DNA of 62,932 nt, filler included, from Sluysia triapertura (GCA_046118255.1; 5 parts of 5 records of this genome joined end to end with filler, not necessarily neighbours in it); one strand, 5' to 3'; positions 38,797 to 50,701 are shown, counted from the first letter of the whole stretch. Notes: a model not told the origin generated them from the sequence alone. Numbers and translations: made by a program.

Positions 38797-39150
38797 TACT
38801 CCTGTTGTTGCAATATCAACAGAAACAATAGAATTAGTTAAATCGGTACTTGCACTATCTATAAAATGCCCATCAATTAATGCAATTAATTTCAACCCAT
38901 CATTAATAGAGGTTCCATAAACTCCAACACTTTGAATGTTTCTTAAATCAATGTTTGGTAATTTTAAGGCTGTAAAATCAATAGAAGAATAAAAACCATT
39001 TCTGGGAACTAAAGTATTTTGATAACTTAATTTAAAATTATTAATATTTTCTAATAGTTTTTTAGGAACACTATTTGGAGAAATATCACAATTAATTCCC
39101 GTACTTTCATTTAAAAAAGCAAAAGTAGAAAACCCACCATTATTTTTCAT
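38797..39150 (-). CDS. Putative tail nozzle / tail tubular protein B (P22 gp10-like), 5' part only, truncated by contig end
   Basis: ATG at 39150 after GGTGAG, overlapping the upstream stop. N-terminus 'FLNESTGINCDISPNSV...ENINNF...TLVPRNGF' fits the G.N...P...N...L..R.G pattern of podophage nozzle proteins; follows portal and adaptor. Confidence 0.55.
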
Positions 39151-39766
39151 TTTTCTCACCACCACTTCCACCAAAAAGGAATGTTCCAGTTGGGAAACTA
39201 CCTCCTGTTCCTAAATGGCCATAATCACCTAAAGATTGTTGCCCTTCAACAATCATCGGTGGTAATGCAAAGTAATTTCAATCAATTTGGCGTTTGTCGG
39301 CTGCTCCTATTACCCTTAATGCTTCCATAGTTTTTTGTTCTCAAATTACATAAAATTGCGTCATCATCATATTTAAATAAGATTGCGCCATTATAAAATT
39401 GAAAATGTAGTTATACAATAACCCTTTAGGAATTGGTCAATAAATATCACTAAAAGAAATATAAGGGGCATTTTTAGGTTGGGGGTTAATTTCTGATTTC
39501 ATCATAATTTGGGGAAAAATAGTGTTAAATTTTCCATTCATATAATTAATCGCTTCATTAAATCACACCACAAAGTTTTCTTGTTCTGGGGAAATATTAC
39601 TTACCGTCGCCATATCAGTATAAATATCGGCTGCCGAACAATATAAGTTAGGGTATTTTAAATAATTATACTTAATTACTTCTCAAGGGGTTTTAGTTGC
39701 TTCTGCTTGGGTGTTTTGATTAGCAGACAAGTTTTGATTTAAAAGATTGTTAAAATTATCGGCCAT
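39140..39766 (-). CDS. Putative head-tail adaptor (P22 gp4 / tail tubular protein A-like), 208 aa, code 4
   Basis: AGGAGG RBS, ATG overlapping portal end, open to TAA 39140 only if 5 TGA = Trp; absent from the supplied ORF track. MADNFNNLL...VVWFNEAINYM...WPIPKGLLYNYIFNFIMAQSY. The ORF is solid; function is inferred from the W.NEA motif, size and position. Confidence 0.6.
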
Positions 39767-41891
39767 AATTACCTCCTAATTGATTGTTAGGTTGATAGTT
39801 GTTATTCCCACTTGGTTGAGGGGGTTGTTTTTGATACCCTGTTCCCTCTTCTTCTTGTTGTCTTTGTTGCAACATTTGTTGTTGTTGGACTTGTTGTTGT
39901 TGGGCTTGAATACGATTTTCTAAAGCATTATAAATTTGAATACTTTCTTGTAAATTAACTTTTGCACTAATCATTCCGATTAATCATTGTTTAATGTTTT
40001 CTACATCGGGCATTGAACCTTGTTGTTGACCAAAAATATCAGTTCCTCCATTTGTTGCACAATTAATAATTTCTTTAGTAAAAATATCAATAAACAAAGT
40101 CGCCATTTGGGTTGCATTTTCTAAAGCAATATTTTCAAATTTTCTAATTCAAGGGGCTTTATTTTTCATAGAAGCCGTTTTAATTAATTCAATTTTTAAA
40201 CTATCACTTAAGTTTGGTAAAGAGTTTAGCATTTGGACTAATTGTTGTTGGACTTGATAATCATGGTATTTATCACCTAAATAAATTGGTTCTCCTAAAA
40301 ATTCCACCACCACATTATCAATTTTTTTTAACACGGAAACATCTAAACTAAATTCGGCAACTCCTAAACTTGTACTACTAATAGTTTTATAAGTAAGTTT
40401 TAAAATATTGTTTTTTTCTTTTAAATAATGAAATAATAATTTAGCCATTTTTTTCAAGAAAACTTTATCATTGTAAATAATAATATTATCAATAGTTAAT
40501 GCTGATTGGGTCGTCATTGCTAATGCATTAGGGGAGTTATTAGTTGTTGCTTGATTTCCCATATAAATAGAGTTCAAGTTAAACATTTGTTGAATTCTTT
40601 GCCCTAAAGAATTGATTTCGGCGGTTAACGCTTGAATTGTTGCAATTGGCGGTTCAGTTCATTTTAAAACTTCACTAATGTTTTTGTTATTTTTTAAAGA
40701 GATAGCAATAATTTGGCCCGGAATTGATAAGTCTTGTAATTTTCTATTAGTAGTAATTGCGTCTTCATCCGTTAAAAGGGTTGGAACACAAAAGTTAATA
40801 GAAATATAAGACTTAATCATTTCTAATAAATCTATTTGTTTTTGAGTAGATAAGGCTTTTAAAACGGGAGAATTCCCATAGAAATTTTTACTATCACTAA
40901 TACAATATGAACCAACAATTGGAAAATTATTATGTTTTAGTGAATAAACTTTATATTGTCCTAAATAATGTTCTTCAATTACAAGTTGTTTTTTAGTAAT
41001 GGGGTCAAAGACTTTCCGATAAAGAACACATAGGTCGGCTCTTCTTAAAACATCATCATTATTTAAAATTGGAGTATAGTATAATTTCACTTCATATCAA
41101 ATACGCATACCTTCAATAATAGAAGTTTGGGCTGCTTGTATATTATCATGTAAAAAATCTAATACTTTATGATTTACACCCACTAAATTCCGATAGTTTT
41201 GAATAATATTATGAGCATTTCCCCGTTTTACAATAAAAACATATTTAGCATCTTCAATACTGGTTGCTAATTTATCGGCATAAATATCGGTTGGGTCAAT
41301 TAATTCTAATTGGACGAAATCTTGTGATTGGAATAAATCGGTATTAGTTTTAGGTTCATTTTTAAAAGTAATTTTAGTAAAAGAACACCCATATTCAAAC
41401 ATTTTGCGTTTTCTTTTAACTTCAAAGTTATCAATTTCTAAAGCATTTTCAATACCGATATTGATAGTATCACTAATAGCAGCAAACACATTATTCCCAT
41501 CATCAATATCTCCCATTCCATTTGCAGAAACATTAATCTCTCCTGATTTTAAAATTGTATGGGCAATCTTTTGCTCTAAAATAGAGTTCAAAGTATTTGT
41601 ACTTGGAGTATTATATATTTTTGCAAATTTAGAAAAAGGGCTACTTTCATCAGGTTTTATTCCTTCTTCAATTACATAATTTCCCACTCTTGTATTATTG
41701 TTTTCAATGATATCTTGGGCATCGGCTCATTGTTTTTCTTTAATAACTCTTACAATCATCGCATCTAATAAATGTTGGAGGACTTCAGGAGGCATTTTTT
41801 CAAAGTCATCAGCATGAAAAACTTGTTTTTGTTTTTCAGCAAAAATTTTTCAATCTTCTTTGGTAATATTTTTTAATAAACTTTCTTTCAT
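39756..41891 (-). CDS. Portal protein, P22-like, 711 aa, code 4
   Basis: AAGGAGG RBS. Track ORFs 41097-41687, 40659-41090, 40149-40586 and 39756-39974 are one frame joined by 6 TGA. Motifs 'EYGCSFTKI', 'ELIDPTDIYADKLATSIEDAKYVF', 'FYGNSPVLKALSTQKQID' and a Gln-rich C-terminus; directly downstream of TerL. Confidence 0.8.
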
Positions 41892-41900
41892 ATACCCTCC

Positions 41901-43664
41901 TTAAAATCAGCGAATAGTGTAGAATTGATTTGTTTGCTGACGCTGATTTTCTTTTTTTTGAATTAAATATTCTCTTGTTTTAATAACCGCTTCTCAATGA
42001 TATTTATTCTTGTATTCTTCTCTATTAATTAATTGTGCAAACATATATAAACTATCAATCAAATCAAATGTTAACCCAACTTTCGCCCCTAAAGGAAGTC
42101 TTAATTCTCCTTTAGAAAGAACTTTTTGATATTTAGTTAATTCCTCAATTAATAACATGGTGTTTTCATTTTCTACAATAAATAATTTCTTATCAAACAA
42201 TAATTTATTAATAACGGCAATAGAACTTTGAGGGTGTTTTAAACCCTTAATAGAAGTATCAATATGCACTCCATATTTAGCATAGTTATAAACTAAAGAA
42301 GACACTTCCCTATCTTGTTGTATTTTTCTGTTAGCAGAACAATCACCAGTATGAATAACTTCTCAATATTCATTTAAACTTTTGCCCGTTCATCTATTTT
42401 TGGCTTCTAACATATTCATTGCTTGTTGTTGAATTGTTAAATCTCTATTTGCATAACAATCAACAATATAATATTTCTCCTCTTTAATATCTAACAAGAT
42501 AACTAAAAGGGTTGTATTTGCATTGTTTTCTCCAAAATCAGTGATATAAAAAATGGGTTTATTGTTAACATATTGAGGTTGCAAGTGTTCTGGAATATTA
42601 TTAATTAAATTATCTTTTCATCCCAAAATAATTTCTCTGGTAGAAAAAAACATATCACAAAAAACGTCCATTCAAATTTTCTCTATATTAGTAGATTGCA
42701 ATTGTTTCATTAAAAAGAAATTATCACTATTCGGAGAAACTAACATATCTAAAAGAAAACTTGTTCTATTGTTAACACACTTATTTTTTTTATAATGAGC
42801 AAACATATAATTATCAATTGGAACATATTTAGAATAATAAACTTCGCTACTTGCTAACACATATCTATTTAAAATATTAGAAGCATCGGCATTGGTTTCT
42901 AAAATCATTGTTCTATTAGATTGCATCATAATAGGACGAGAAATTCCATCAATAGTTTCATATTTTAAAGAGCCATCTTTATTTCTCTCATAAATGGCTT
43001 GCCCTTTTTCCCGAAGCCTATTCTCAATTTGGTTTAAGACTTCTTCACTTAACTTATTGGCTTCGGAAACCCAAATATCATTAAAGTTTGAACCCCTAAT
43101 TCCATCATCTTTTTCAGATGACTTAAATTCAAATTGTACCCGATTTTTTAACCTTCAAACCTTATCATTCATCTCTACAAATTGATTTCTGATTGGGTCA
43201 TCATCTTTGGTAATTAAATATTTTAATAATTCATCTTTTTGAATAGTTTTTTGTTGGTGAAGAGTTGGTGCTAAACATAAAATCTTATATTCACTATTGG
43301 TAGAAAGGGCTTTTTTTACAATCTTAAAAGCACTGGCCGTTGTTTTTCCGGTATTTGGTGAACCAACTAAAATCAATTCTTCTGCTTGTGAATTAATAAT
43401 CTCTAATTGATAATTAAAGAACTTAATGTGAAAAACATATTTTCCACAAGCATCACATTGCCCAAAATTTTTCCCTTTTAATTTAATGGAGTTTCCCACC
43501 TTACATAAAGGACATTTAATAATCTCTTCAATTGGAGAAAACTTTTCATTTTTAGTAAGTGGTATATAATCAACATACGATTTTTTAAACTTTAAGGTTT
43601 GTTTAGCAGTTAAACTTTGGCGATATTCATTGATGATTTCTGTTAAAGTACTTTTAATTTTCAT
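41901..43664 (-). CDS. terL: Terminase large subunit, 587 aa, code 4
   Basis: Four track ORFs fuse through 7 TGA to TAA 41901. Q motif (FNYQ), Walker A GSPNTGKT, 'LAPT..Q', 'IRGSNFNDIWVSEA' (Walker B region), coupling motif 'ILETN', RNase H-like nuclease acidic motifs 'ITDFG', 'TGDCSA', 'DLIDSLY'. Confidence 0.92.
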
Positions 43665-44580
43665 AATTTAACCCCGAAACAAACATAACCATTCCCTCAT
43701 CTGCTTGTAAGTTCTTATCAATTACATATCTATCAATATCGGTAATTTTATTAGAAATTTGGGTTTCATAATCTAATTTCTCTTTGGCTAACACCATTTT
43801 TTTACAATATCTTAATGCTTCAATATGAGGTATTCATGATTTATTTTTTAAGATTTTAGAGAAATTAGGGTTTTCCTCTAATGCTTCTTTTAATTTACTT
43901 TTAATATTTAAATCTAAAAGAGTTGTTAATAAAATATCAATTTCCGCTAATAAGGTTTCATCAAACTTATAAGTGGGGTTATTCATAGAAGTTAAGATTT
44001 TAATATATTCACTTTTTTTTAATCTTAATTCTTCATTTTCTAACATTTTTCGGAACTTTCAAATTGGGTCAAAGTTTCAATATTTTTTTAAATCTTCAAC
44101 AGAAAACCCTAACAATTCTTTACTATCAATTGTCGCAAACCGATTTTCTAATAATTTAGTTTTTTCTCCTTCTGATGCATTATCTATATATTTATAATCA
44201 ACTTCTAATTGGGCTAATGCTAATTTTTGGTCATCATTGAAAATGGGGTTATTTATAGAACCACCATTATTTTTTAATGCTTGCCGATGAATAATATTAA
44301 TTCTTCTCTCTTTTGTTATTCTTTTTTCTTTTACAAAATCTTCTCATAGTTTTTGTTTTAAATACTTTTGTTCCATTTTTACAATCTCAATATACATATT
44401 AGTAATATTAGAGTTTAGCAATTTATTATCTTTTTTGGCTAATTTGTCTAATAAACAAGCAATTTTTAAAACCTTGATTTTTTCTTGTTCATCACGGAAA
44501 TTCTCTTTTAGCAAAATCTCTTTTGTTTTTGCTTCAAAAGTATTTTCTCGTTTCATTCACAATTCAAATTGATATTCCAA
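43654..44580 (-). CDS. Hypothetical protein, 308 aa, code 4; possible terminase small subunit by position
   Basis: TTG start after AAGGA. Track ORFs 44344-44556 and 43834-44046 are joined; 5 TGA in total; stop overlaps the TerL start by 11 bp. Function is positional only. Confidence 0.65.
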
Positions 44581-44630
44581 AACATTTCCTTTGCTAATTG
44601 TTGTTATAAATTCAATATAACCATAAAGAA

Positions 44631-44662
44631 TTTACAACAACAATTTAAGTTGTTGTTGAAAA
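44631..44662 (-). terminator. Stem-loop after putative capsid gene
   Basis: CAACAACAA / TTGTTGTTG inverted repeat just after TAA 44663; weak U tract. Confidence 0.5.
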
Positions 44663-46486
44663 TTAAACTCTCACTGTTAGAGTGCTTACATAATCAGAGT
44701 TCGTTAATAAACCCATTCAAGAGTATTTAATAACGACATTTGAACTTGGAATTGAACCTTTAGGAATTGTTGCGGAAACATAAGTTCCTGTTGTTTGGGT
44801 TCCGATTGGAACAATTTGTAGTTTGTTGCCTAAAGTATTTTTTCATTTATAAGAAATGTCGGCTGCTGTTTTTCCATTTGGAACAATTGCAACGGTATAT
44901 TTTGGAATTGCAATATCAACGGTAAATGGGTTAGCATCTCATTTAATATAGTCAAGAGCATCATAGAATTCGGCAACTAAATAGTTTTTAGTATTAATTG
45001 CAGGCAATAAATCTACTCCCCCATATAAAGAGTTAGCAACAAAGTTGAATTTCATATCTTGGTTCGGAGTAATTGGAACAGCCCCAGTTCCATTAGAGTT
45101 TAAAGCCATCCCGATTGAACTTGGGTAAGTTTGGGTATTATCAGGGTTTCATTTATACCCCACCATAATTTTCCCTGCTTCTAATTTTGGAACAAAGTTA
45201 GAACTAAACTCAATGAATTTTGTTGTATCTACAAAACTATTTACTTGTGTTGCATGTGATACAAACTCTATATTTGTTGATTTTCATTGATAAATATTAG
45301 TTTTATTAGAAATGTATAAGAATGCTAATTCATTACTTGCAATTGCTTCTCCTCCCACGGAATTTGGGGAAGTTTCTCCGGCACTTGCTTTATAATAAGC
45401 CCCCATTAAAGAACCTATTGGGGCTTGCATAATTTTAATTTGGTTTAATAATGATGTTCTTCCACCATACATTACATTGTTATCATTTTGAGCGTTAAAT
45501 GATGTTGTTTCCCCTTTAGGGCCATTAATCATCACCATTTTTTGCACATCTGCTCCATAGTAATTTAACATATATTGATAAAAACTAAAGTCAGTATATA
45601 ACAATGGAGCGGTAAACGCATCGGCTTGACGGTCCATTTTTGCTTGTAGTCCGATTAAATAATTAGTAAAAATATGGAAATCAAATTTTTTAGAAGCAGT
45701 TGACGAAATTGAATTAACATCTACATCAAAGCAAGTTCCGATTCTTTTTTTGTATCTTACTTTGTCCATTCCAAAAATGGCTCCATCAGTTAATTGTTCT
45801 TTTGTTGTTGCTTTAAAGAAGTTTGTTTGGAAAATTGATTTGTCTTCTAATGAGTGAACTTTAATGTTATTACTCATAGCATTACAGAAATCAATAATAT
45901 TATATTTATTAGAAATATCAGCATTAAAATCAACAGGCATCCCATTTTCATTAACCGCTTTTTCAGTTTCAAAAGAAATATCAACGGAAAGGACTTTATC
46001 ATTGTTTTTTACATATTGTATTTTTTCAAAAAATGATAGGAAATCACCGAAGAAATGTTTTAATTGCGCAGTATCAATTAATTGTAAATTTCATTTTCAG
46101 ATTGTTCCTCAACAGTGTTTAATGTGAATATTTTCTGAACTAATGGTTAAAATAGTTTCTGTTGCTGCTGCATTACTTGTTCCATACCCATCTTTAAAAG
46201 TACTAATTCCCCCTTTTGGAGCGAGAACAGAATAAGGGACTGAAACCACAAAGGCTTTATTTGGGCCTTCTAATGAAACTGTTAGTTCATTTGGTAAGCC
46301 TCCTTTTGGTAAATCAGCAAATAACGAATTACGGAATGTATAAATTCAAAATCGTTCTGTTAGTGATCTTGTTAGCATTGGGGCATTAGTTAGGGTTGAT
46401 GTATTAGATGTATTCCCTGGAGCGTTAGTTTGCAATAATGGAGCCCCATACTCCACCGCAAAGTTTAATGATTGTAAATCAGCCAT
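44663..46486 (-). CDS. Putative major capsid protein with beta-rich C-terminal extension, 607 aa, code 4
   Basis: MADLQSLNFAVEYGAPLLQTNAPG... is open to TAA 44663 only with 9 TGA = Trp and includes track ORF 45284-45940. G/A/S/T/N-rich composition, follows a scaffold-like gene, ends at a stem-loop. The ORF is solid; the capsid call is inference. Confidence 0.65.
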
Positions 46487-46505
46487 ATATTAGTCTTTCT
46501 TAATA

Positions 46506-47177
46506 CTAATATCTTTTATTATCAAGGACCTCATCTAACATATCATTGATTTGTTCTGCTTCTGATTTGATAGTTTTTTTCGTATCTTCAAGGACTTTAG
46601 CAAAGTCTTCTTTATAAAAATCACTTGGAGAAATTCTTAACCCTTCATTAGCCGCTTTTTTCTTATTATTAATGAAATTATTAATCTCATCTTGGAAAAA
46701 AATGCGTTTTAGTTTGGCTTTATCATTGCTTTTATGATAAATCTCACACATTTCGGGGTTCATATTTCCCATGATTTTATTTTCTAAAAACTTTTTATCT
46801 CTTGAAGATAATGTTATACCTTCATTATCAAAAACATCTTCAATGGTTTCTATGATGTCTTCTTTTAAATAAAGATTAGTATTTTGTTGTTGTTGTAATT
46901 GGGCCGCTTGAATTTTCTTTAAATTCTCATTTTGTTCTTTAATTAATTGTTCTAAAGCAGATAACTTATCATTTTGAGTATTTTGGTTTTCTACTTTTTT
47001 TGCAATTCTATTTTGAATGTATTGTTGGGTTTTTAAAGAGTTTTCTTCGGCTTGGTGTTTAAATTTAATTAATTCTTCGTATTCACCTTTAGTAAGGGTA
47101 ATTTCCTCATTATTTTGTGAATTATCAACTTGGGTTGCTTCTTCAAGAACTTGAGAAGCAGGGTTTTCTGTGGGCAT
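46506..47177 (-). CDS. Putative capsid scaffolding protein, 223 aa
   Basis: Acidic N-terminus, E/K/Q coiled-coil composition, directly upstream of the putative capsid gene; no Trp codons; ends TAG. Confidence 0.6.
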   Translation of the reverse strand: MPTENPASQVLEEATQVDNSQNNEEITLTKGEYEELIKFKHQAEENSLKTQQYIQNRIAKKVENQNTQNDKLSALEQLIKEQNENLKKIQAAQLQQQQNTNLYLKEDIIETIEDVFDNEGITLSSRDKKFLENKIMGNMNPEMCEIYHKSNDKAKLKRIFFQDEINNFINNKKKAANEGLRISPSDFYKEDFAKVLEDTKKTIKSEAEQINDMLDEVLDNKRY

Positions 47178-47339
47178 TATTGGGCTTTTCTTTCCAAAAT
47201 AACGTCCTTCCTATTAAAAATATTTGCATAGTTTTACAAGGTTAGAGCCTGTTATTTTTAATAAATTACTTATTTTAAAAAGAGATATTTCATCTCCATA
47301 AACAATATATCTCTTCTTATATTATTTAGCATTTTTCCT

Positions 47340-47369
47340 AAAAAAAAAGGTCCCTAAAGGACCTTTTTT
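47340..47369 (-). terminator. Intrinsic (bidirectional-type) terminator
   Basis: Minus strand AAAAAAGGTCC-TTTAG-GGACCTTTTTTTTT, about 20 bp after TAA 47389. Confidence 0.85.
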
Positions 47370-47388
47370 CTAAAATTGATTAGTAAAC

Positions 47389-48204
47389 TTATTTTTCTTG
47401 GACCATTTCTACCCGTTGATTATTTAAAATTTCATGCATTTTAGCCTCTTTTTCATCTAAATGTAATCTTTTATACACTTCTTCAAGATAATCATAGTTA
47501 ATTCCAACAATATTGACTTTATTTCACATAATAAACAACTTATCAGTATCAACCATTTCTCGTAAATTATTTCAAATACTATTTACAAGCAATTTTTCAT
47601 TATTCGTTAAATAATGAGTTTGTAAATAAATATAATCAATAAACAAACTATCAACTGCAAGTACTTGATTATAATTATTCGTTAACAAAAATACTTCTTG
47701 TAATTTCTTAATTTTGGCTTTCATATCATCAGAGATTTTTAAATATTGAGGTTTAATAACTTCTGCAAACTCCTCATTTTTTTCCCTAATTTGTTTACAA
47801 TTATCTAATGCATTTCTAATTTTTTCATCTTTCGCAAGGGTATGGAAAAAAATAATATGCCCATTAAAAAAACTTACTAAATAATTATCTTTTGTTAAAA
47901 ATTCACAAAGATATTGCTCACTTGTTTCATCAAAAGTTATCGTAATTTCTTTTTTTAACCCTAATCTAATGTATTGAAAATTTTCTTTTCCATTCTCTTC
48001 TTTTTTAAACTCTAAATAAAAACTTTCATTCCCCTCTTCTTGATCTACAACAATTTTCTTCTCTTTTCCTAAAACAATTCTAAATTGCACTTCATCAGCA
48101 TTTAATAAATTAATCTTTTGGGGTTTAAAATTACTAATTCTTAAATGTGCAACTAATTCATCAAATTCCACTGGTTTAGTAATTACTTGATAAACCATTT
48201 CCAT
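47389..48204 (-). CDS. Hypothetical phage protein, 271 aa, code 4
   Basis: Track ORF 47572-48204 extends through 2 TGA to TAA 47389, right before a clear terminator; AAGGA RBS. Confidence 0.8.
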
Positions 48205-48206
48205 TA

Positions 48207-48428
48207 TTAGTCCTTCACTTCTTTTACAACTTTAATTTTTTTCTCTTCTTGTCGTTCTTCTTTAATACTTTCTAAACATTGAAAAGGTAAACTTAAAATT
48301 ACGGAAATTAAATAAATCACCCCAAATGTTAATGTGTAAATTATTGCAAATGGTAAAAGTAATCAACTTAATAAATTTTTTTCCCCTTCTGGAAATCACT
48401 CCATAATAAACTCTTTAAAAAATTCCAT
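48207..48428 (-). CDS. Small membrane protein, 73 aa, code 4
   Basis: AAGGAG RBS; MEFFKEFIMEWFPEGEKNLLSWLLLPFAIIYTLTFGVIYLISVILSLPFQCLESIKEERQEEKKIKVVKEVKD; 2 TGA; long hydrophobic segment and charged tail; stop is 2 bp before the next ATG. Confidence 0.75.
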
Positions 48429-48459
48429 CTTTTCTCCTTCTATTGATTATTCATCTTTT

Positions 48460-48487
48460 ATCTTACCATATAAAAAAAAACAAACAA
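48460..48487 (-). promoter_or_regulatory. Sigma70-type promoter with extended -10
   Basis: TTGTTT-16 bp-TAAGAT with TGn (TGGTAAGAT), about 30 bp upstream of the 73-aa gene. Confidence 0.55.
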
Positions 48488-48506
48488 GTTTTTTTCCTTG
48501 TTTGTT
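48471..48506 (-). terminator. Intrinsic terminator overlapping the downstream promoter
   Basis: Minus strand AACAAACAAG-GAAAAAAA-CTTGTTTGTT followed by a T run. Confidence 0.65.
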
Positions 48507-48692
48507 GTGATTAAAAGAATAAACTCTAACTATTAAGTTAGAAATTTCCCATTCTTGATTAGAAAGTGAGAAAAAAATGACTTATGAATAACAAATTTTA
48601 ATATTAGTTTAAAGAGAGTAATAGAAAAACAATTTATTTCATAACATCTTTGTAAAGCAACATATCACCAATCTACATTACTTTACTTTTTT

Positions 48693-48720
48693 ATCTTACC
48701 ATCTTTTTCTATATTTCCAA
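48693..48720 (-). promoter_or_regulatory. Second sigma70-type promoter with the same extended -10
   Basis: TTGGAA-16 bp-TAAGAT; shares ATGGTAAGATAAAA with the promoter at 48460. Confidence 0.5.
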
Positions 48721-48739
48721 ATATTTAATTAAAAAAAAA

Positions 48740-49010
48740 TTCCCCTCTCTCTTCTACAGGTATTTTCTTCTTCCTTTCTTTTAAAAATTCCCTCTTCTCT
48801 ATACAAGTCTTCTTCTCTCTCTTCTCTACAAGTATTTCCTTCTTCTCTTATTCCTTCATTCCCTCATTCCTTTCTTCTCTCATTCCTTTATTCTCTCATT
48901 TCACTCTTCCCTTCTTCTCTTATTTCCTTCTTCTCTCATTCCCTTCTTCTTCTCTTAAATTCCTTCCTTGTCCCCTCCTTTCCTCTCGCGCTCTCCTATT
49001 CTCCTTTTAT
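48740..49010 (+). repeat. Polypyrimidine (CT-rich) low-complexity tract
   Basis: Mostly C/T on +, with repeated TTCTCTCATTCC-like words; no long ORF on the purine strand. Confidence 0.85.
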
Positions 49011-49012
49011 TT

Positions 49013-50075
49013 GATTAAATTTTATTTTTTTTTTTTTTCAGAGAAAAAAAAATAAAATTTAATCTATGTCTTCTTCTCTTATATAAATTTTTTTATATTT
49101 ATCTTCTCTTATCTAAATTTTTTTATTTATATTTTCTTATAATTAATTGTTATTTTTTTTACCATAGTAAAAAAAAATAACAATTAATTAATATTATTTC
49201 ATTTGATTAAATTTTATTTTTTTTTATGGGGGTAAAAAAAAATAAAATTTAATCTATATTATCTTATTTATAATTTTTTATATTTATCTTCTCTTATATA
49301 TTATTTCTTATTAATTAATTTTTTTTTTACCATAGTAAAAAAAAAAATTAATTAATTAATATTACTTATTTTAATTATTTCTTTTATAAATTCATTAATA
49401 TATGATTAATTTTTTTTTACTATGGTAAAAAAAATTAATCATATATTATTTTATCTATTTATATTTCTTATATATTTATATTTATTAATATATATAAATA
49501 TATTGATATACGCGCGTAAGCGCGTGTGCGCGCAGATGCGTACGGGTGCGTACACACGTACACGTACCTGAATGCGCGCTACATATATGTACGCGTGCGC
49601 GTACGCGATATTCCTTATATAAATTTATTATATTAATAGTAATATAAAGTTAATTTTATTTTTTTTTACCCCCATAAAAAAAAATAAAATTAACTTAAAT
49701 TTAACTATTAATAAATTCCTTATTTAATAAATTCTTTATTAATAATGCTCTTATTAATAATTCATTATTGATAAATTCATTATTAGTAATTTATTTAAGT
49801 TAATTTTTATTTTTTTTTACTATGGTAAAAAAAATAAAAATTAACTAATATTAATTAACTTAAATTTAATTAATTTAAATTTCCTTATTGATAAATTCAT
49901 TATTGATAAATTCCTTACTTATAAATTTATTTAAGTTAGTTTTATTTTTTTTTTACTATGGTAAAAAAAAATAAAACTAACTAATATTAATTAACTTAAA
50001 TTTAATTATTTACTTATATTTATTTAGTGTTAATTTTATTTTTTTTTTACTATGGTAAAAAAAAATAAAATTAAC
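49013..50075. repeat. Array of nine ~45-52 bp palindromes (hairpin/cruciform units)
   Basis: Units at about 49013-49064, 49140-49190, 49205-49254, 49311-49355, 49397-49447, 49647-49696, 49798-49846, 49934-49982 and 50029-50075. Structure is arm-Tn-core-An-arm; cores are TACTATGGTA/TACCATAGTA (6), TATGGGGGTA/TACCCCCATA (2) and one variant. Confidence 0.92.
49509..49608. other. CpG-dense alternating purine-pyrimidine island
   Basis: About 20 CG dinucleotides in 100 bp within an almost pure AT region; a smaller copy lies near 50137-50153. Confidence 0.85.
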
Positions 50076-50172
50076 TAATTATATTTATATTCTTTATATT
50101 TATTTGTTTAATATATTTATATATATATTATATTTATACGCGCGCACGCGCGAGTATATATATATTAATATC

Positions 50173-50258
50173 TTGATTTATACACACGCGAGTAATATAT
50201 ACAAAGATATTGATTTATACACGCACAAGTAATATATACAAAGTTATTGATTTATACC
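50173..50258 (+). repeat. 37-bp tandem repeat (about 2.3 copies), iteron-like
   Basis: TTGATTTATACAC....AGTAATATATACAAAG.TA with starts at 50173, 50210 and 50247. Confidence 0.8.
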
Positions 50259-50701
50259 CTCTTTTTACAAGATGCTTATATTACAATTGTCTTATATTAC
50301 AAGATGACTTATCTTCTTCTTACCATTATTCACATAAATTTATCTTCTAATAATTGTTAAATTTACCTATACCTTCATAAACCTATCTCTTTTCATCTAC
50401 AATCAAAATTTATTAAATTATAGGAAATCATATTACCTTATATATTCTCAAGGAATATGATATATAAGAGGTATCTTTAAATAGATGTTTTAATCATTCC
50501 TTATATAAGAGGGTGGTATATATAAAGGAATTACCATGAGAGATATTCAATGATGATTAGAGGGGGTATATCTCAAGATATTGAATATATATATGTGCGC
50601 GTATATGATATTATTTTTATTATATATATAATACTTATGTAAATTTATGAATATAGTAAATTTTAAGATAGATACAAGGGGTTAGTTATATGTTGTATTG
50701 T

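What the first reader, a model, noticed from the sequence alone, without database searches (positions are those of the whole stretch)
38797..48428. Hidden TGA=Trp podophage morphogenesis region inside an animal assembly: a probable new Mollicute phage
Seen: 14 minus-strand track ORFs plus unannotated gaps resolve into 8 complete genes and 1 partial gene when TGA is read through. I count 36 in-frame TGA, 1 TGG, and all true stops are TAA/TAG. The genes have AGGAGG/AAGGAG RBSs, start-stop overlaps and intrinsic terminators. Established: code 4 is used by Mycoplasmatales/Entomoplasmatales, and few tailed phages of these wall-less bacteria are characterised. TerL + ~710-aa portal + adaptor + nozzle is the P22-like podovirus architecture. 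Inference: this is a phage of an uncultured Mollicute associated with the sequenced animal, invisible to standard-code annotation. Alternative: a stop-codon-recoded phage of a standard-code host.
Basis: partly seen in the sequence, partly recalled or inferred. Interest (0 to 1): 0.92.

Follow-up and report, generated by a model that had tools for sequence, protein, structure and literature searches.

The report
New TGA=Trp tailed phage fragment
This is a 9.6-kb piece of a previously unseen tailed bacteriophage whose genes read the stop codon TGA as tryptophan, so it most likely infects a wall-less Mollicute-type bacterium living with the sequenced animal; it is a real, very divergent new phage but of a kind already known.

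Summary
On the minus strand of 38797-48428, reading TGA through gives 8 complete genes and 1 cut gene at 97% coding density. They hold 36 in-frame TGA, 1 TGG and no internal TAA/TAG, and all 8 ends are TAA/TAG. With X at each TGA, the 587-aa gene aligns almost end to end with large terminases and keeps 25 of 27 near-invariant columns. The 711-aa gene matches a P22/SU10/T7-type portal profile as one collinear domain (hhalign 97%). TGA means Trp, not Gly.

The element is very divergent: no hit among 50,697 deposited phages and only 12 TerL hits in 1.84 billion proteins. Six of the eight relative lineages checked are also TGA=Trp, AT-rich phage contigs that use TGA in every gene block, and no suppressor tRNA was found. 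This fits phages adapted to a code-4 host. A Mollicute host is the best inference but is not shown. The only cultured relative is the Paenibacillus podovirus API480, at about 21-22% identity.

The "adaptor + nozzle" labels are unproven. The 2-kb non-coding, palindrome-rich end (48710-50701) is unexplained. Novelty: new member of a known kind.

The parts
48207..48428 (-). g0: 73-aa small protein with one strongly hydrophobic segment; first gene of the operon; 2 in-frame TGA; function unknown (a holin-like membrane protein is a guess)
   Evidence: ORF and counts. AAGGAG motif before the ATG. Maximum 19-aa hydropathy is 2.34. No family hit.
47389..48204 (-). G1: 271-aa orphan protein; 2 in-frame TGA
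   Evidence: Only sub-threshold hits (phrog_12301 at 0.031). No homologue in the 5.8-billion-cluster search.
46506..47177 (-). G2: 223-aa all-helical coiled-coil protein; no TGA; function unknown
   Evidence: AlphaFold pLDDT 78 with a helix of about 90 residues. No fold match in PDB or BFVD. No sequence homologue. A weak small-terminase hit at E=0.022 only.
44663..46486 (-). G3: 607-aa orphan protein; 9 in-frame TGA; function unknown
   Evidence: Its largest stop-free piece has no hit in Pfam, PHROGs, NCBIfam or the phage collection, and its fold prediction failed with pLDDT 28. No match to the capsid, scaffold or other small profiles.
43654..44580 (-). G4: about 308-aa protein whose end overlaps the TerL start by 11 nt; 5 in-frame TGA; small terminase by position only; start codon uncertain
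   Evidence: No family hit for its pieces.
41901..43664 (-). G5: large terminase (TerL), 587 aa, with an N-terminal 4-Cys zinc ribbon, Walker A ATPase and RNaseH-like nuclease; 7 in-frame TGA and the only TGG
   Evidence: Two separate pieces hit TerL families (phrog_2 at 9.5e-7; phrog_5653 at 5e-5). With X at TGA it aligns 53-549 to 23-500 of P0013 (530 aa, E=2e-32) and 51-568 to 35-550 of P0005 (552 aa). It keeps 25 of 27 near-invariant columns. The homologues carry Pfam Terminase_3/6N plus the C-terminal nuclease domains.
39756..41891 (-). G6: portal protein, 711 aa, of the P22/SU10/T7-type portal family; 6 in-frame TGA
   Evidence: Against a profile of 40 portal-family members (Pfam PF16510, PF23899, PF12236), hmmsearch gives E=5.7e-13 as one domain (G6 170-685 to profile 128-611) and hhalign gives 97.1% over 456 columns; the other window genes score nothing. 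blastp to the annotated API480 portal gives 2e-8. One piece hits phrog_332 at 1e-3, which is a portal family despite its label. AAGGAGG precedes the ATG.
39140..39766 (-).
   Evidence: No match to the small profiles built from the relatives' post-portal and post-capsid proteins. AGGAGG precedes the ATG.
38797..39150 (-).
   Evidence: blastp to the N-terminus of L004's 1346-aa protein gives E=0.002. hhalign to the N-terminal profile of API480 gp11, L001_947 and L004_1346 gives 67%, E=5e-5, collinear. gp11 is a particle protein by mass spectrometry (PMC6937236) and hits phrog_3287.
48479..48506 (-). Intrinsic-terminator-like hairpin with a T-run, just upstream of the operon
   Evidence: DNA fold -8.2 kcal/mol, z=-2.9.
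48446..48478 (-). Promoter-like stretch with an extended -10 motif (TGGTAAGAT) between the terminator and g0; inferred only
   Evidence: Sequence read. A consensus match is listed. A second copy of the motif lies near 48695-48707.
44635..44658 (-). Hairpin in the 82-nt spacer between G3 and G4 (no clear T-run)
48710..50701 (.). Non-coding repeat region (20% GC): a polypyrimidine tract of about 250 nt, nine T-run/loop/A-run palindromes, a duplicated module of about 210-270 bp, alternating-GC islands and three 37-nt iteron-like repeats. Whether it belongs to the phage is open.
   Evidence: Absent from the relatives and from the coding part. No match in Rfam, plasmids, viral contigs or JGI metagenome contigs.

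Best explanation
The piece carries one rightward-to-leftward operon of a novel tailed double-stranded-DNA phage (Caudoviricetes). The operon lies on the minus strand, spans about 9.6 kb and holds 9 genes. It includes the DNA-packaging motor (TerL, with a zinc ribbon, ATPase and nuclease) and the portal, followed by the start of the virion-protein genes. The genes are intact and are written in genetic code 4, so TGA is read as tryptophan and only TAA/TAG terminate. These points are shown. Transcription probably starts at a promoter just downstream of a terminator at about 48.48-48.51 kb. Several genes are probably translationally coupled through 11-nt overlaps. These two points are inferred. 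TGA has almost fully replaced TGG, and the related phages use TGA in every gene block without a suppressor tRNA. The phage therefore most likely relies on a host whose own translation reads TGA as Trp. Among such hosts, an AT-rich Mollicute (Mycoplasmatales or Entomoplasmatales) associated with the sequenced animal is the most likely. This last step is inference.
For: Gene structure and codon counts come: 36 TGA, 1 TGG, no internal TAA/TAG, 8 of 8 ends TAA/TAG, and P about 2.5e-19 against decay. TerL. Portal. TGA=Trp: TGA is 1.16% of codons against 0.03% for TGG. The first TGA column of G5 is W in 6 of 9 homologues, and it aligns with the W that follows the cut-off end of P0001 in P0013. At TGA columns of six code-4 TerLs, proven standard-code TerLs have W in 6 of 94 cells against 1.4% background (P=0.002), and Gly is not enriched. 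Host-adapted code: six of eight relative lineages checked are themselves TGA=Trp with 24-32% GC. TGA density is uniform at 0.9-1.6% across the leftward, replication and structural blocks, including a DnaB-type helicase with 8 TGA to 1 TGG. No tRNA(UCA) was found in the window or in the fetched relatives; L004 covers 20,050 of 20,334 bp of its contig and has no tRNA at all. The criterion is from Borges et al. (bioRxiv 10.1101/2021.08.26.457843). Bacterial-type translation signals: SD motifs before at least 4 genes. Novelty.
Against: No direct host link exists. The scans of 185,579 species-representative genomes found no relative, though the patterns were short and the family is divergent. There is no similarity to any deposited Mollicute phage. 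Sample metadata for the relatives could not be found. Only a late-type operon is present, so early genes of this particular phage cannot be checked. The TerL group also contains standard-code members (L001, L008), and its only cultured relatives infect Paenibacillus, a standard-code Bacillota. Code changes between related phages are documented. Only about 35% of code-4 phages in that survey had a detectable suppressor tRNA, so absence is weak evidence. The non-coding end at 48.7-50.7 kb looks unlike the relatives and unlike typical phage DNA.
Confidence: 0.68

Rival explanations
1. It is a stop-codon-recoded phage of a standard-code host, for example a low-GC Bacillota. TGA would be read as Trp only after the phage switches the code during infection, using a suppressor tRNA or another factor encoded outside this piece.
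For: Most code-4 phages surveyed in gut metagenomes were predicted to infect standard-code Firmicutes or Bacteroidetes, with recoding concentrated in structural and lysis genes, which is the kind of gene seen here. Related phages can differ in code, and suppressor tRNAs were detected in only about 35% of them. The TerL group holds standard-code members, and the only cultured relatives infect Paenibacillus.
Against: The TGA to TGG ratio is 36 to 1 in the window. In the relatives, TGA density is the same in the leftward, replication and structural blocks, including a DnaB-type helicase. That pattern is the one attributed to phages adapted to a recoded host. No tRNA(UCA) was found in the window or in the fetched relatives, including the nearly whole L004 contig.
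Confidence: 0.2
2. The phage DNA is joined to non-phage DNA. It could be a prophage in its bacterial host's chromosome, a lateral transfer into the animal genome, or a chimeric contig. The non-phage partner would be the 48.7-50.7 kb end.
For: The end region has no ORF in either code. It contains a 250-nt polypyrimidine tract, microsatellite-like alternating-GC islands and AT palindromes. Its CpG o/e is 1.48 against 0.60 in the coding part and its GC is 20% against 28.5%. None of these features occurs in the relatives.
Against: All nine genes are intact in code 4 with no TAA/TAG and no frameshift, which argues against an old, decaying insertion in a standard-code nuclear genome. The relatives also have 1.1-1.6 kb AT-rich non-coding regions with repeats. 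The iteron-like repeats and palindromes are also what a replication origin or genome end can look like. No integrase or attachment site was seen.
Confidence: 0.1
3. It is organellar DNA, for example a mitochondrial plasmid or the genome of a fungus, protist, sponge or cnidarian. These genomes also read TGA as Trp and often have AT-rich spacers with GC clusters and hairpins.
For: Code 4 is also the mould, protozoan and coelenterate mitochondrial code (established knowledge). The non-coding end resembles AT spacers with GC clusters.
Against: TerL and portal are hallmark genes of tailed phages. Shine-Dalgarno motifs and overlapping genes point to bacterial-type translation. The relatives are ordinary phage genomes with a DnaB-type helicase, capsid and portal genes. 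No tRNA or rRNA was found.
Confidence: 0.01
4. It is a decayed standard-code prophage remnant in which the TGA codons are true nonsense mutations.
For: Under the standard code the region breaks into many short ORFs.
Against: 36 of 36 internal stops are TGA (P about 2.5e-19). There are no frameshifts. TerL and portal stay collinear with their families across all TGAs. TGG is missing. 25 of 27 conserved TerL columns are kept.
Confidence: 0.01

Closest known systems
Paenibacillus phage vB_PlaP_API480 (MK533143; podovirus of P. larvae, 45 kb; PMC6937236)
   Same: It is the only cultured phage reached from this TerL group. G5 and G6 match its annotated TerL and portal directly (blastp 7e-7 and 2e-8). 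The TerL gene precedes the portal gene. The G8 N-terminus weakly resembles the N-terminus of its particle protein gp11.
   Different: Identity is only about 21-22%. API480 uses the standard code, has 39% GC in this region and infects a walled Bacillota. It has a 63-aa ORF between TerL and portal, and a 269-aa protein plus the capsid gene right after the portal. The window lacks the small ORF and shows no recognisable capsid gene.
Uncultured TGA=Trp phage contigs L002-L007 (ENA ERZ23490334 and ERZ23499121; Logan SRR27362848, ERR1301851 and SRR14611565; JGI 3300026545)
   Same: They are the nearest TerL relatives. They share the N-terminal 4-Cys zinc ribbon, 24-32% GC, TGA as a sense codon with TGG rare, and TAA/TAG as the only stops. 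Their portals belong to the same family.
   Different: TerL identity is only 22-36%. The other window genes have no detectable counterpart in them, except the G8 N-terminus in L004. They have a 60-115-aa ORF between TerL and portal. None has the palindrome-rich non-coding region.
Stop-codon-recoded (code 4) gut phages: Jade, Agate, Garnet, Topaz and other clades (Borges et al., bioRxiv 10.1101/2021.08.26.457843)
   Same: In-frame TGA is read as Trp in low-GC phage genomes, and standard-code gene calling fragments them.
   Different: [quoted passage not shown] Here and in the relatives TGA use is uniform and no suppressor tRNA was found. I could not test whether this element belongs to any of those clades, because no sequences of them were at hand.
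Known Mollicute phages and phage-like elements: Spiroplasma poulsonii NSRO/MSRO particle contigs and S. citri U44405 (P58 TerL, P54 portal, P123); Mycoplasma phages P1, MAV1, MAgV1 and vB_Mfe_PM329
   Same: They have code-4 hosts, comparable GC (27% for PM329) and small tailed-phage genomes with TerL and portal (bioRxiv 10.1101/2021.12.09.471767; PMC11004492).
   Different: tblastn with the window's TerL, portal and G3 pieces, or with the relative P0005, gave no hit in the phage collection. Judged by the names of the S. citri proteins (P58, P54), the TerL and portal sizes differ from the 587 and 711 aa seen here. U44405 was not in the collections, so it was not compared directly.
Salmonella phage P22
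   Same: The portal family of G6 includes Pfam P22_portal (PF16510), and G6 has a similar length of about 700 aa.
   Different: No P22-type adaptor (gp4) or tail hub (gp10) was recognised. No scaffold or coat gene follows the portal as it does in P22 (gene order recalled from established knowledge). No named P22 protein came back from any search.

Membership tests
Tailed phages (Caudoviricetes): packaging and morphogenesis module | Large terminase with a Walker A/B ATPase and an RNaseH-like nuclease | tested here: met
   near end-to-end alignment, and 25 of 27 near-invariant columns kept, including GKTT, the catalytic Glu and three Asp.
Tailed phages (Caudoviricetes): packaging and morphogenesis module | Portal protein next to the terminase gene | tested here: met
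   one collinear domain against the portal profile, hhalign 97%, and blastp 2e-8 to an annotated portal.
Tailed phages (Caudoviricetes): packaging and morphogenesis module | HK97-fold major capsid protein | tested here: inconclusive
   No window gene matches the small capsid profile or the Pfam and PHROG capsid families. The gene may lie outside the piece or be too divergent (G3 is untested by structure; the fold prediction failed).
Genetic code 4 (TGA=Trp) | TGA inside conserved genes and never used as a terminator; only TAA/TAG terminate | tested here: met
Genetic code 4 (TGA=Trp) | TGA corresponds to Trp rather than Gly (code 25) in alignments; TGG depleted | tested here: met
   W enriched 4.6-fold (P=0.002), Gly not enriched, and TGA 1.16% against TGG 0.03% of codons. 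The portal alignment was uninformative.
Genetic code 4 (TGA=Trp) | A tRNA-Trp reading UGA (host or phage) and no release-factor-2 activity at UGA | not testable with these tools
   No tRNA lies in the piece, and the host genome is not available.
Phage of a Mollicute host | Direct host link (integrated copy, CRISPR spacer match or co-occurrence with a Mollicute genome) | tested here: inconclusive
   Pattern scans of species-representative genomes found no relative, but the reach of the patterns was short. Spacers and the source reads are not available.
Phage of a Mollicute host | Code use adapted to the host across all gene classes | tested here: inconclusive
   Met in the relatives L004-L006. 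In the window only one operon can be seen, with 7 of 9 genes carrying TGA.
Phage of a Mollicute host | Homology to known Mollicute phages | tested here: not met
   No hits in the phage collection. This is not required for membership, but the support is missing.
   G7 has no match. The G8 N-terminus gives 67% hhalign probability to a family of large virion proteins of unassigned role. No nozzle or adaptor family was hit.
   There are no tail genes in the piece and no particle images. The only support is that the one cultured relative is a podovirus (PMC6937236).
Recoded phage of a standard-code host (Borges et al.) | Phage-encoded suppressor tRNA(UCA), release factor or Trp-tRNA synthetase | tested here: not met
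   None in the window or in the fetched relatives. The window is only part of a genome, so this is not final.
Recoded phage of a standard-code host (Borges et al.) | Recoding confined to late genes, with early genes in the standard code | tested here: not met
   In the relatives TGA density is uniform across blocks. This is not testable in the window itself.

The most novel reading that the evidence does not exclude
The window and the six code-4 contigs found here would represent an undescribed, family-level lineage of short-tailed phages of wall-less Mollicutes. It would be marked by a zinc-ribbon TerL and a P22/SU10-type portal, and this member would come from a symbiont or parasite of the sequenced animal. 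Its palindrome- and iteron-rich 2-kb end would be a new kind of phage origin or genome terminus rather than foreign DNA.
Probability: 0.35. Interest if true: 0.6.

Novelty: new member of a known kind. Interest (0 to 1): 0.45.

Why it matters
Only about 20 phages or prophages of mycoplasmas are reported, and one is formally classified (PMC11004492). Tailed phages of Spiroplasma are known only from preliminary particle sequencing (bioRxiv 10.1101/2021.12.09.471767). A deep-branching new code-4 phage, with a set of metagenomic relatives that also use TGA=Trp throughout, widens that small sample. It also shows that standard-code annotation hides such elements in host-organism assemblies. It flags a probable Mollicute associate of the sequenced animal. 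It gives a concrete test case for telling phages adapted to a recoded host apart from phages that switch the code during infection. It does not change what is known about how phages package DNA or about how code 4 works.

Tried and rejected
- **Whole-piece and single-piece searches.** Megablast of the whole piece, and tblastn of the TerL, portal and G3 pieces, against 50,697 phages found nothing.
- **Locus searches.** Single-piece and alignment-based searches in viral, genome and metagenome contigs found no confirmed relative. The wide TerL alignment was too divergent for pattern design.
- **Homologue searches.** G2 and G1 have none. The window's proteins are not in the 15-billion-protein collection.
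- **Solved structures.** PDB sequence searches with the portal pieces found nothing.
- **Fold prediction.** The G3 piece failed (pLDDT 28). G2 folds as a coiled coil with no meaningful PDB or BFVD match.
- **RNA and family libraries.** Rfam and NCBIfam gave nothing useful.
- **Portal alignment as a test of what TGA means.** It was uninformative, because the family is Trp-poor.
- **Capsid, scaffold and adaptor assignment for G2, G3, G4 and G7.** Small profiles gave nothing.
- **Sample accessions of the relatives.** They appear in no searchable paper.
- **S. citri U44405.** It is not in the collections.
- **The palindrome.** It is absent from viral and JGI metagenome contigs. The non-coding end gives only trivial AT-rich hits in plasmids.
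- **Rejected readings.** A pseudogenised standard-code remnant, code 25 (TGA=Gly) and a mitochondrial origin; the reasons are under the rival explanations.

Full report
**Scope.** I worked only on window 38797-50701. That stretch contains no N. In-frame TGA codons were always kept as X in scripts and given as counts per gene.

**Observation.**
- Under the standard code the minus strand breaks into many short ORFs.
- With only TAA/TAG as stops it becomes nine consecutive ORFs that fill 97% of 38797-48428. Eight are complete (73, 271, 223, 607, about 308, 587, 711 and 208 aa) and one is cut by the piece edge.
- They hold 36 in-frame TGA (2, 2, 0, 9, 5, 7, 6, 5, 0), one TGG and no internal TAA/TAG. 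They end in 7 TAA and 1 TAG.
- In the two other frames of the same genes TGA is only 30% of stop triplets. Decay would therefore give 36 of 36 TGA with P of about 2.5e-19.
- TGA is 1.16% of codons and TGG is 0.03%. GC3 is 19%.
- SD-like motifs precede g0, G1, G6 and G7. Three junctions overlap by 11 nt. One good terminator-like hairpin lies just upstream of the operon.

**What the genes are: TerL (G5).**
- Two separate pieces hit two TerL families: phrog_2 at 9.5e-7 and phrog_5653 at 5e-5.
- A full HMMER pass of the N-terminal piece over 1.84 billion representative proteins found only 12 hits, the best 35% identical. The full-length hits carry Terminase_3/6N and the RNaseH-like nuclease domains.
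- With X at its TGAs, G5 aligns 53-549 to residues 23-500 of P0013 (530 aa, E=2e-32) and 51-568 to 35-550 of P0005 (552 aa).
- It keeps 25 of 27 near-invariant columns. These include a 4-Cys zinc ribbon, the Walker A GKTT, the catalytic Glu and three nuclease Asp.

**What the genes are: portal (G6).**
- A standard-code relative (L001) has a 626-aa protein after its TerL. That protein's family carries Pfam P22_portal, SU10_portal and T7-type Head-tail_con.
- A profile of 40 members matches G6 as one collinear domain (G6 170-685 to profile 128-611). hmmsearch gives 5.7e-13 and hhalign gives 97.1% over 456 columns. All other window genes score nothing.
- G6 also matches the annotated portal of a cultured phage by blastp at 2e-8.

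**What the genes are: the rest.**
- G1, G2, G3, G4 and G7 are orphans.
- G2 is a confident coiled coil without a fold match.
- The G3 piece did not fold.
- The G8 N-terminus gives a modest, collinear match (hhalign 67%, E=5e-5) to the shared N-terminus of API480 gp11, L001's 947-aa protein and L004's 1346-aa protein. gp11 is a particle protein by mass spectrometry with no assigned role.
- 'Adaptor + nozzle' therefore remains a guess. No capsid gene is recognisable in the piece.

**Meaning of TGA.**
- Trp would be almost absent if TGA were anything else.
- The first TGA column of G5 is W in 6 of 9 homologues. It aligns with the W that follows the cut-off end of P0001 in P0013, its full-length cluster mate.
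- Over six code-4 TerLs, the two TerLs proven to be standard-code have W at TGA columns in 6 of 94 cells against a 1.4% background (P=0.002). Tyr is also enriched. Gly is not (P=0.8). Several TGA columns are shared by 3-5 of the six.
- The code is therefore 4, not 25.

**Relatives and the host question.**
- Eight TerL-relative lineages were checked. Six are TGA=Trp contigs with 24-32% GC and only TAA/TAG stops: L002, L003, L004, L005, L006 and L007. Two use the standard code: L001 and L008.
- In L004-L006, TGA density is 0.9-1.6% in every block. This includes the leftward blocks and a DnaB-type helicase with 8 TGA to 1 TGG.
- No tRNA(UCA) was found in the window or in the fetched parts. L004, 20,050 of 20,334 bp fetched, has no tRNA at all.
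- Borges et al. attribute a high, genome-wide share of recoded genes to phages adapted to a recoded host. They attribute late-gene-restricted recoding with suppressor tRNAs to phages of standard-code hosts. By that criterion this group looks host-adapted.
- From my own knowledge, the known bacteria that read TGA as Trp are the Mycoplasmatales/Entomoplasmatales and a few tiny-genome insect endosymbionts. A 2025-26 preprint lists Bacillota, Pseudomonadota and Verrucomicrobiota and adds some Eggerthellaceae (abstract). At 28.5% GC, a Mollicute is the most likely host.
- This is inference. No Mollicute genome or phage was linked. The group's only cultured relatives are Paenibacillus phages API480 and SV21. 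API480 is a podovirus (PMC6937236).

**The non-coding end (48710-50701).**
- It has no ORF in either code and is 20% GC.
- It contains a polypyrimidine tract of about 250 nt.
- It contains nine T-run/loop/A-run palindromes with 23-25-bp A/T stems (DNA dG -15 to -18 kcal/mol, z -6 to -8). They fall into two loop families, each present in both orientations.
- A module of about 210-270 bp is duplicated directly.
- It also has alternating-GC islands and three 37-nt iteron-like repeats. CpG o/e is 1.48 against 0.60 in the genes.
- Nothing like it occurs in the relatives or in the coding part. It matches nothing in Rfam, plasmids, viral contigs or JGI metagenome contigs.
- The relatives do have 1.1-1.6 kb AT-rich non-coding regions.
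- It may be a lineage-specific origin or genome end, host DNA, or foreign DNA joined by insertion or misassembly. I cannot tell which.

**Comparison and verdict.**
- The element works like any tailed-phage packaging module. It meets the TerL and portal tests and the code-4 tests. It fails no defining test of 'tailed phage'.
- It is not close to any described phage. About 21-22% identity to API480 is the best named match.
- It is not shown to be a Mollicute phage or a P22-like podovirus.
- It is a new, very divergent member of a known kind, code-4 tailed phages. Interest is moderate at 0.45.

Noticed in passing
window 48710-50701: A highly organised non-coding region: a polypyrimidine tract, nine A/T palindromes in two loop families and both orientations, a duplicated module, alternating-GC islands and 37-nt iterons. 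It is unique among everything searched, and its origin (phage, host or foreign) is unknown.
   Followed up: partly
window 41901-43664 (G5); P0013, P0004, P0005, P0006 and others: This TerL group has an N-terminal four-Cys zinc-ribbon motif ahead of the Walker A motif. It is invariant across the 10 aligned sequences.
   Followed up: partly
L002, L003, L004, L005, L006, L007: A set of uncultured AT-rich phage contigs from ENA, Logan and JGI data use TGA as Trp in all gene blocks. L004 (20 kb, nearly the whole contig) has 90 in-frame TGA and no tRNA gene. No peptidoglycan-hydrolase Pfam family is on record for any gene in the fetched parts of L004 and L005.
   Followed up: partly
window junctions 43654-43664, 39756-39766 and 39140-39150: Three gene junctions overlap by exactly 11 nt, the same geometry each time. 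This suggests translational coupling.
   Followed up: no
window 41892-41900 versus L001, L002, L004-L007 and L009: All relatives, including API480, have a 60-115-aa ORF between TerL and portal. The window has only a 9-nt spacer there.
   Followed up: no
PHROGs phrog_332: This family is labelled 'head-tail adaptor', but a P22_portal-type protein matches it end to end (1.5e-13). The label is misleading and a hit to it means portal.
   Followed up: yes
L003 62-826: The TerL-like gene of this 826-bp code-4 contig ends at a TAA after 133 codons, and a second ORF follows. It may be a split or interrupted TerL.
   Followed up: no
window about 48463-48475 and about 48695-48707 (minus strand): Two copies of a promoter-like motif (ATGGTAAGATAAA). 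The second copy sits upstream of about 180 nt without an ORF, just before the repeat region.
   Followed up: no
window 47178-47388: A 211-nt spacer between G1 and G2, the only long gap inside the operon. It gave only sub-threshold Rfam matches.
   Followed up: no
L002 15-168; L005 8742-8890: Code-4 relatives carry pairs of ordinary tRNA genes (Asp and Arg; Asn and Val) next to the packaging genes, but no UCA-anticodon tRNA.
   Followed up: no
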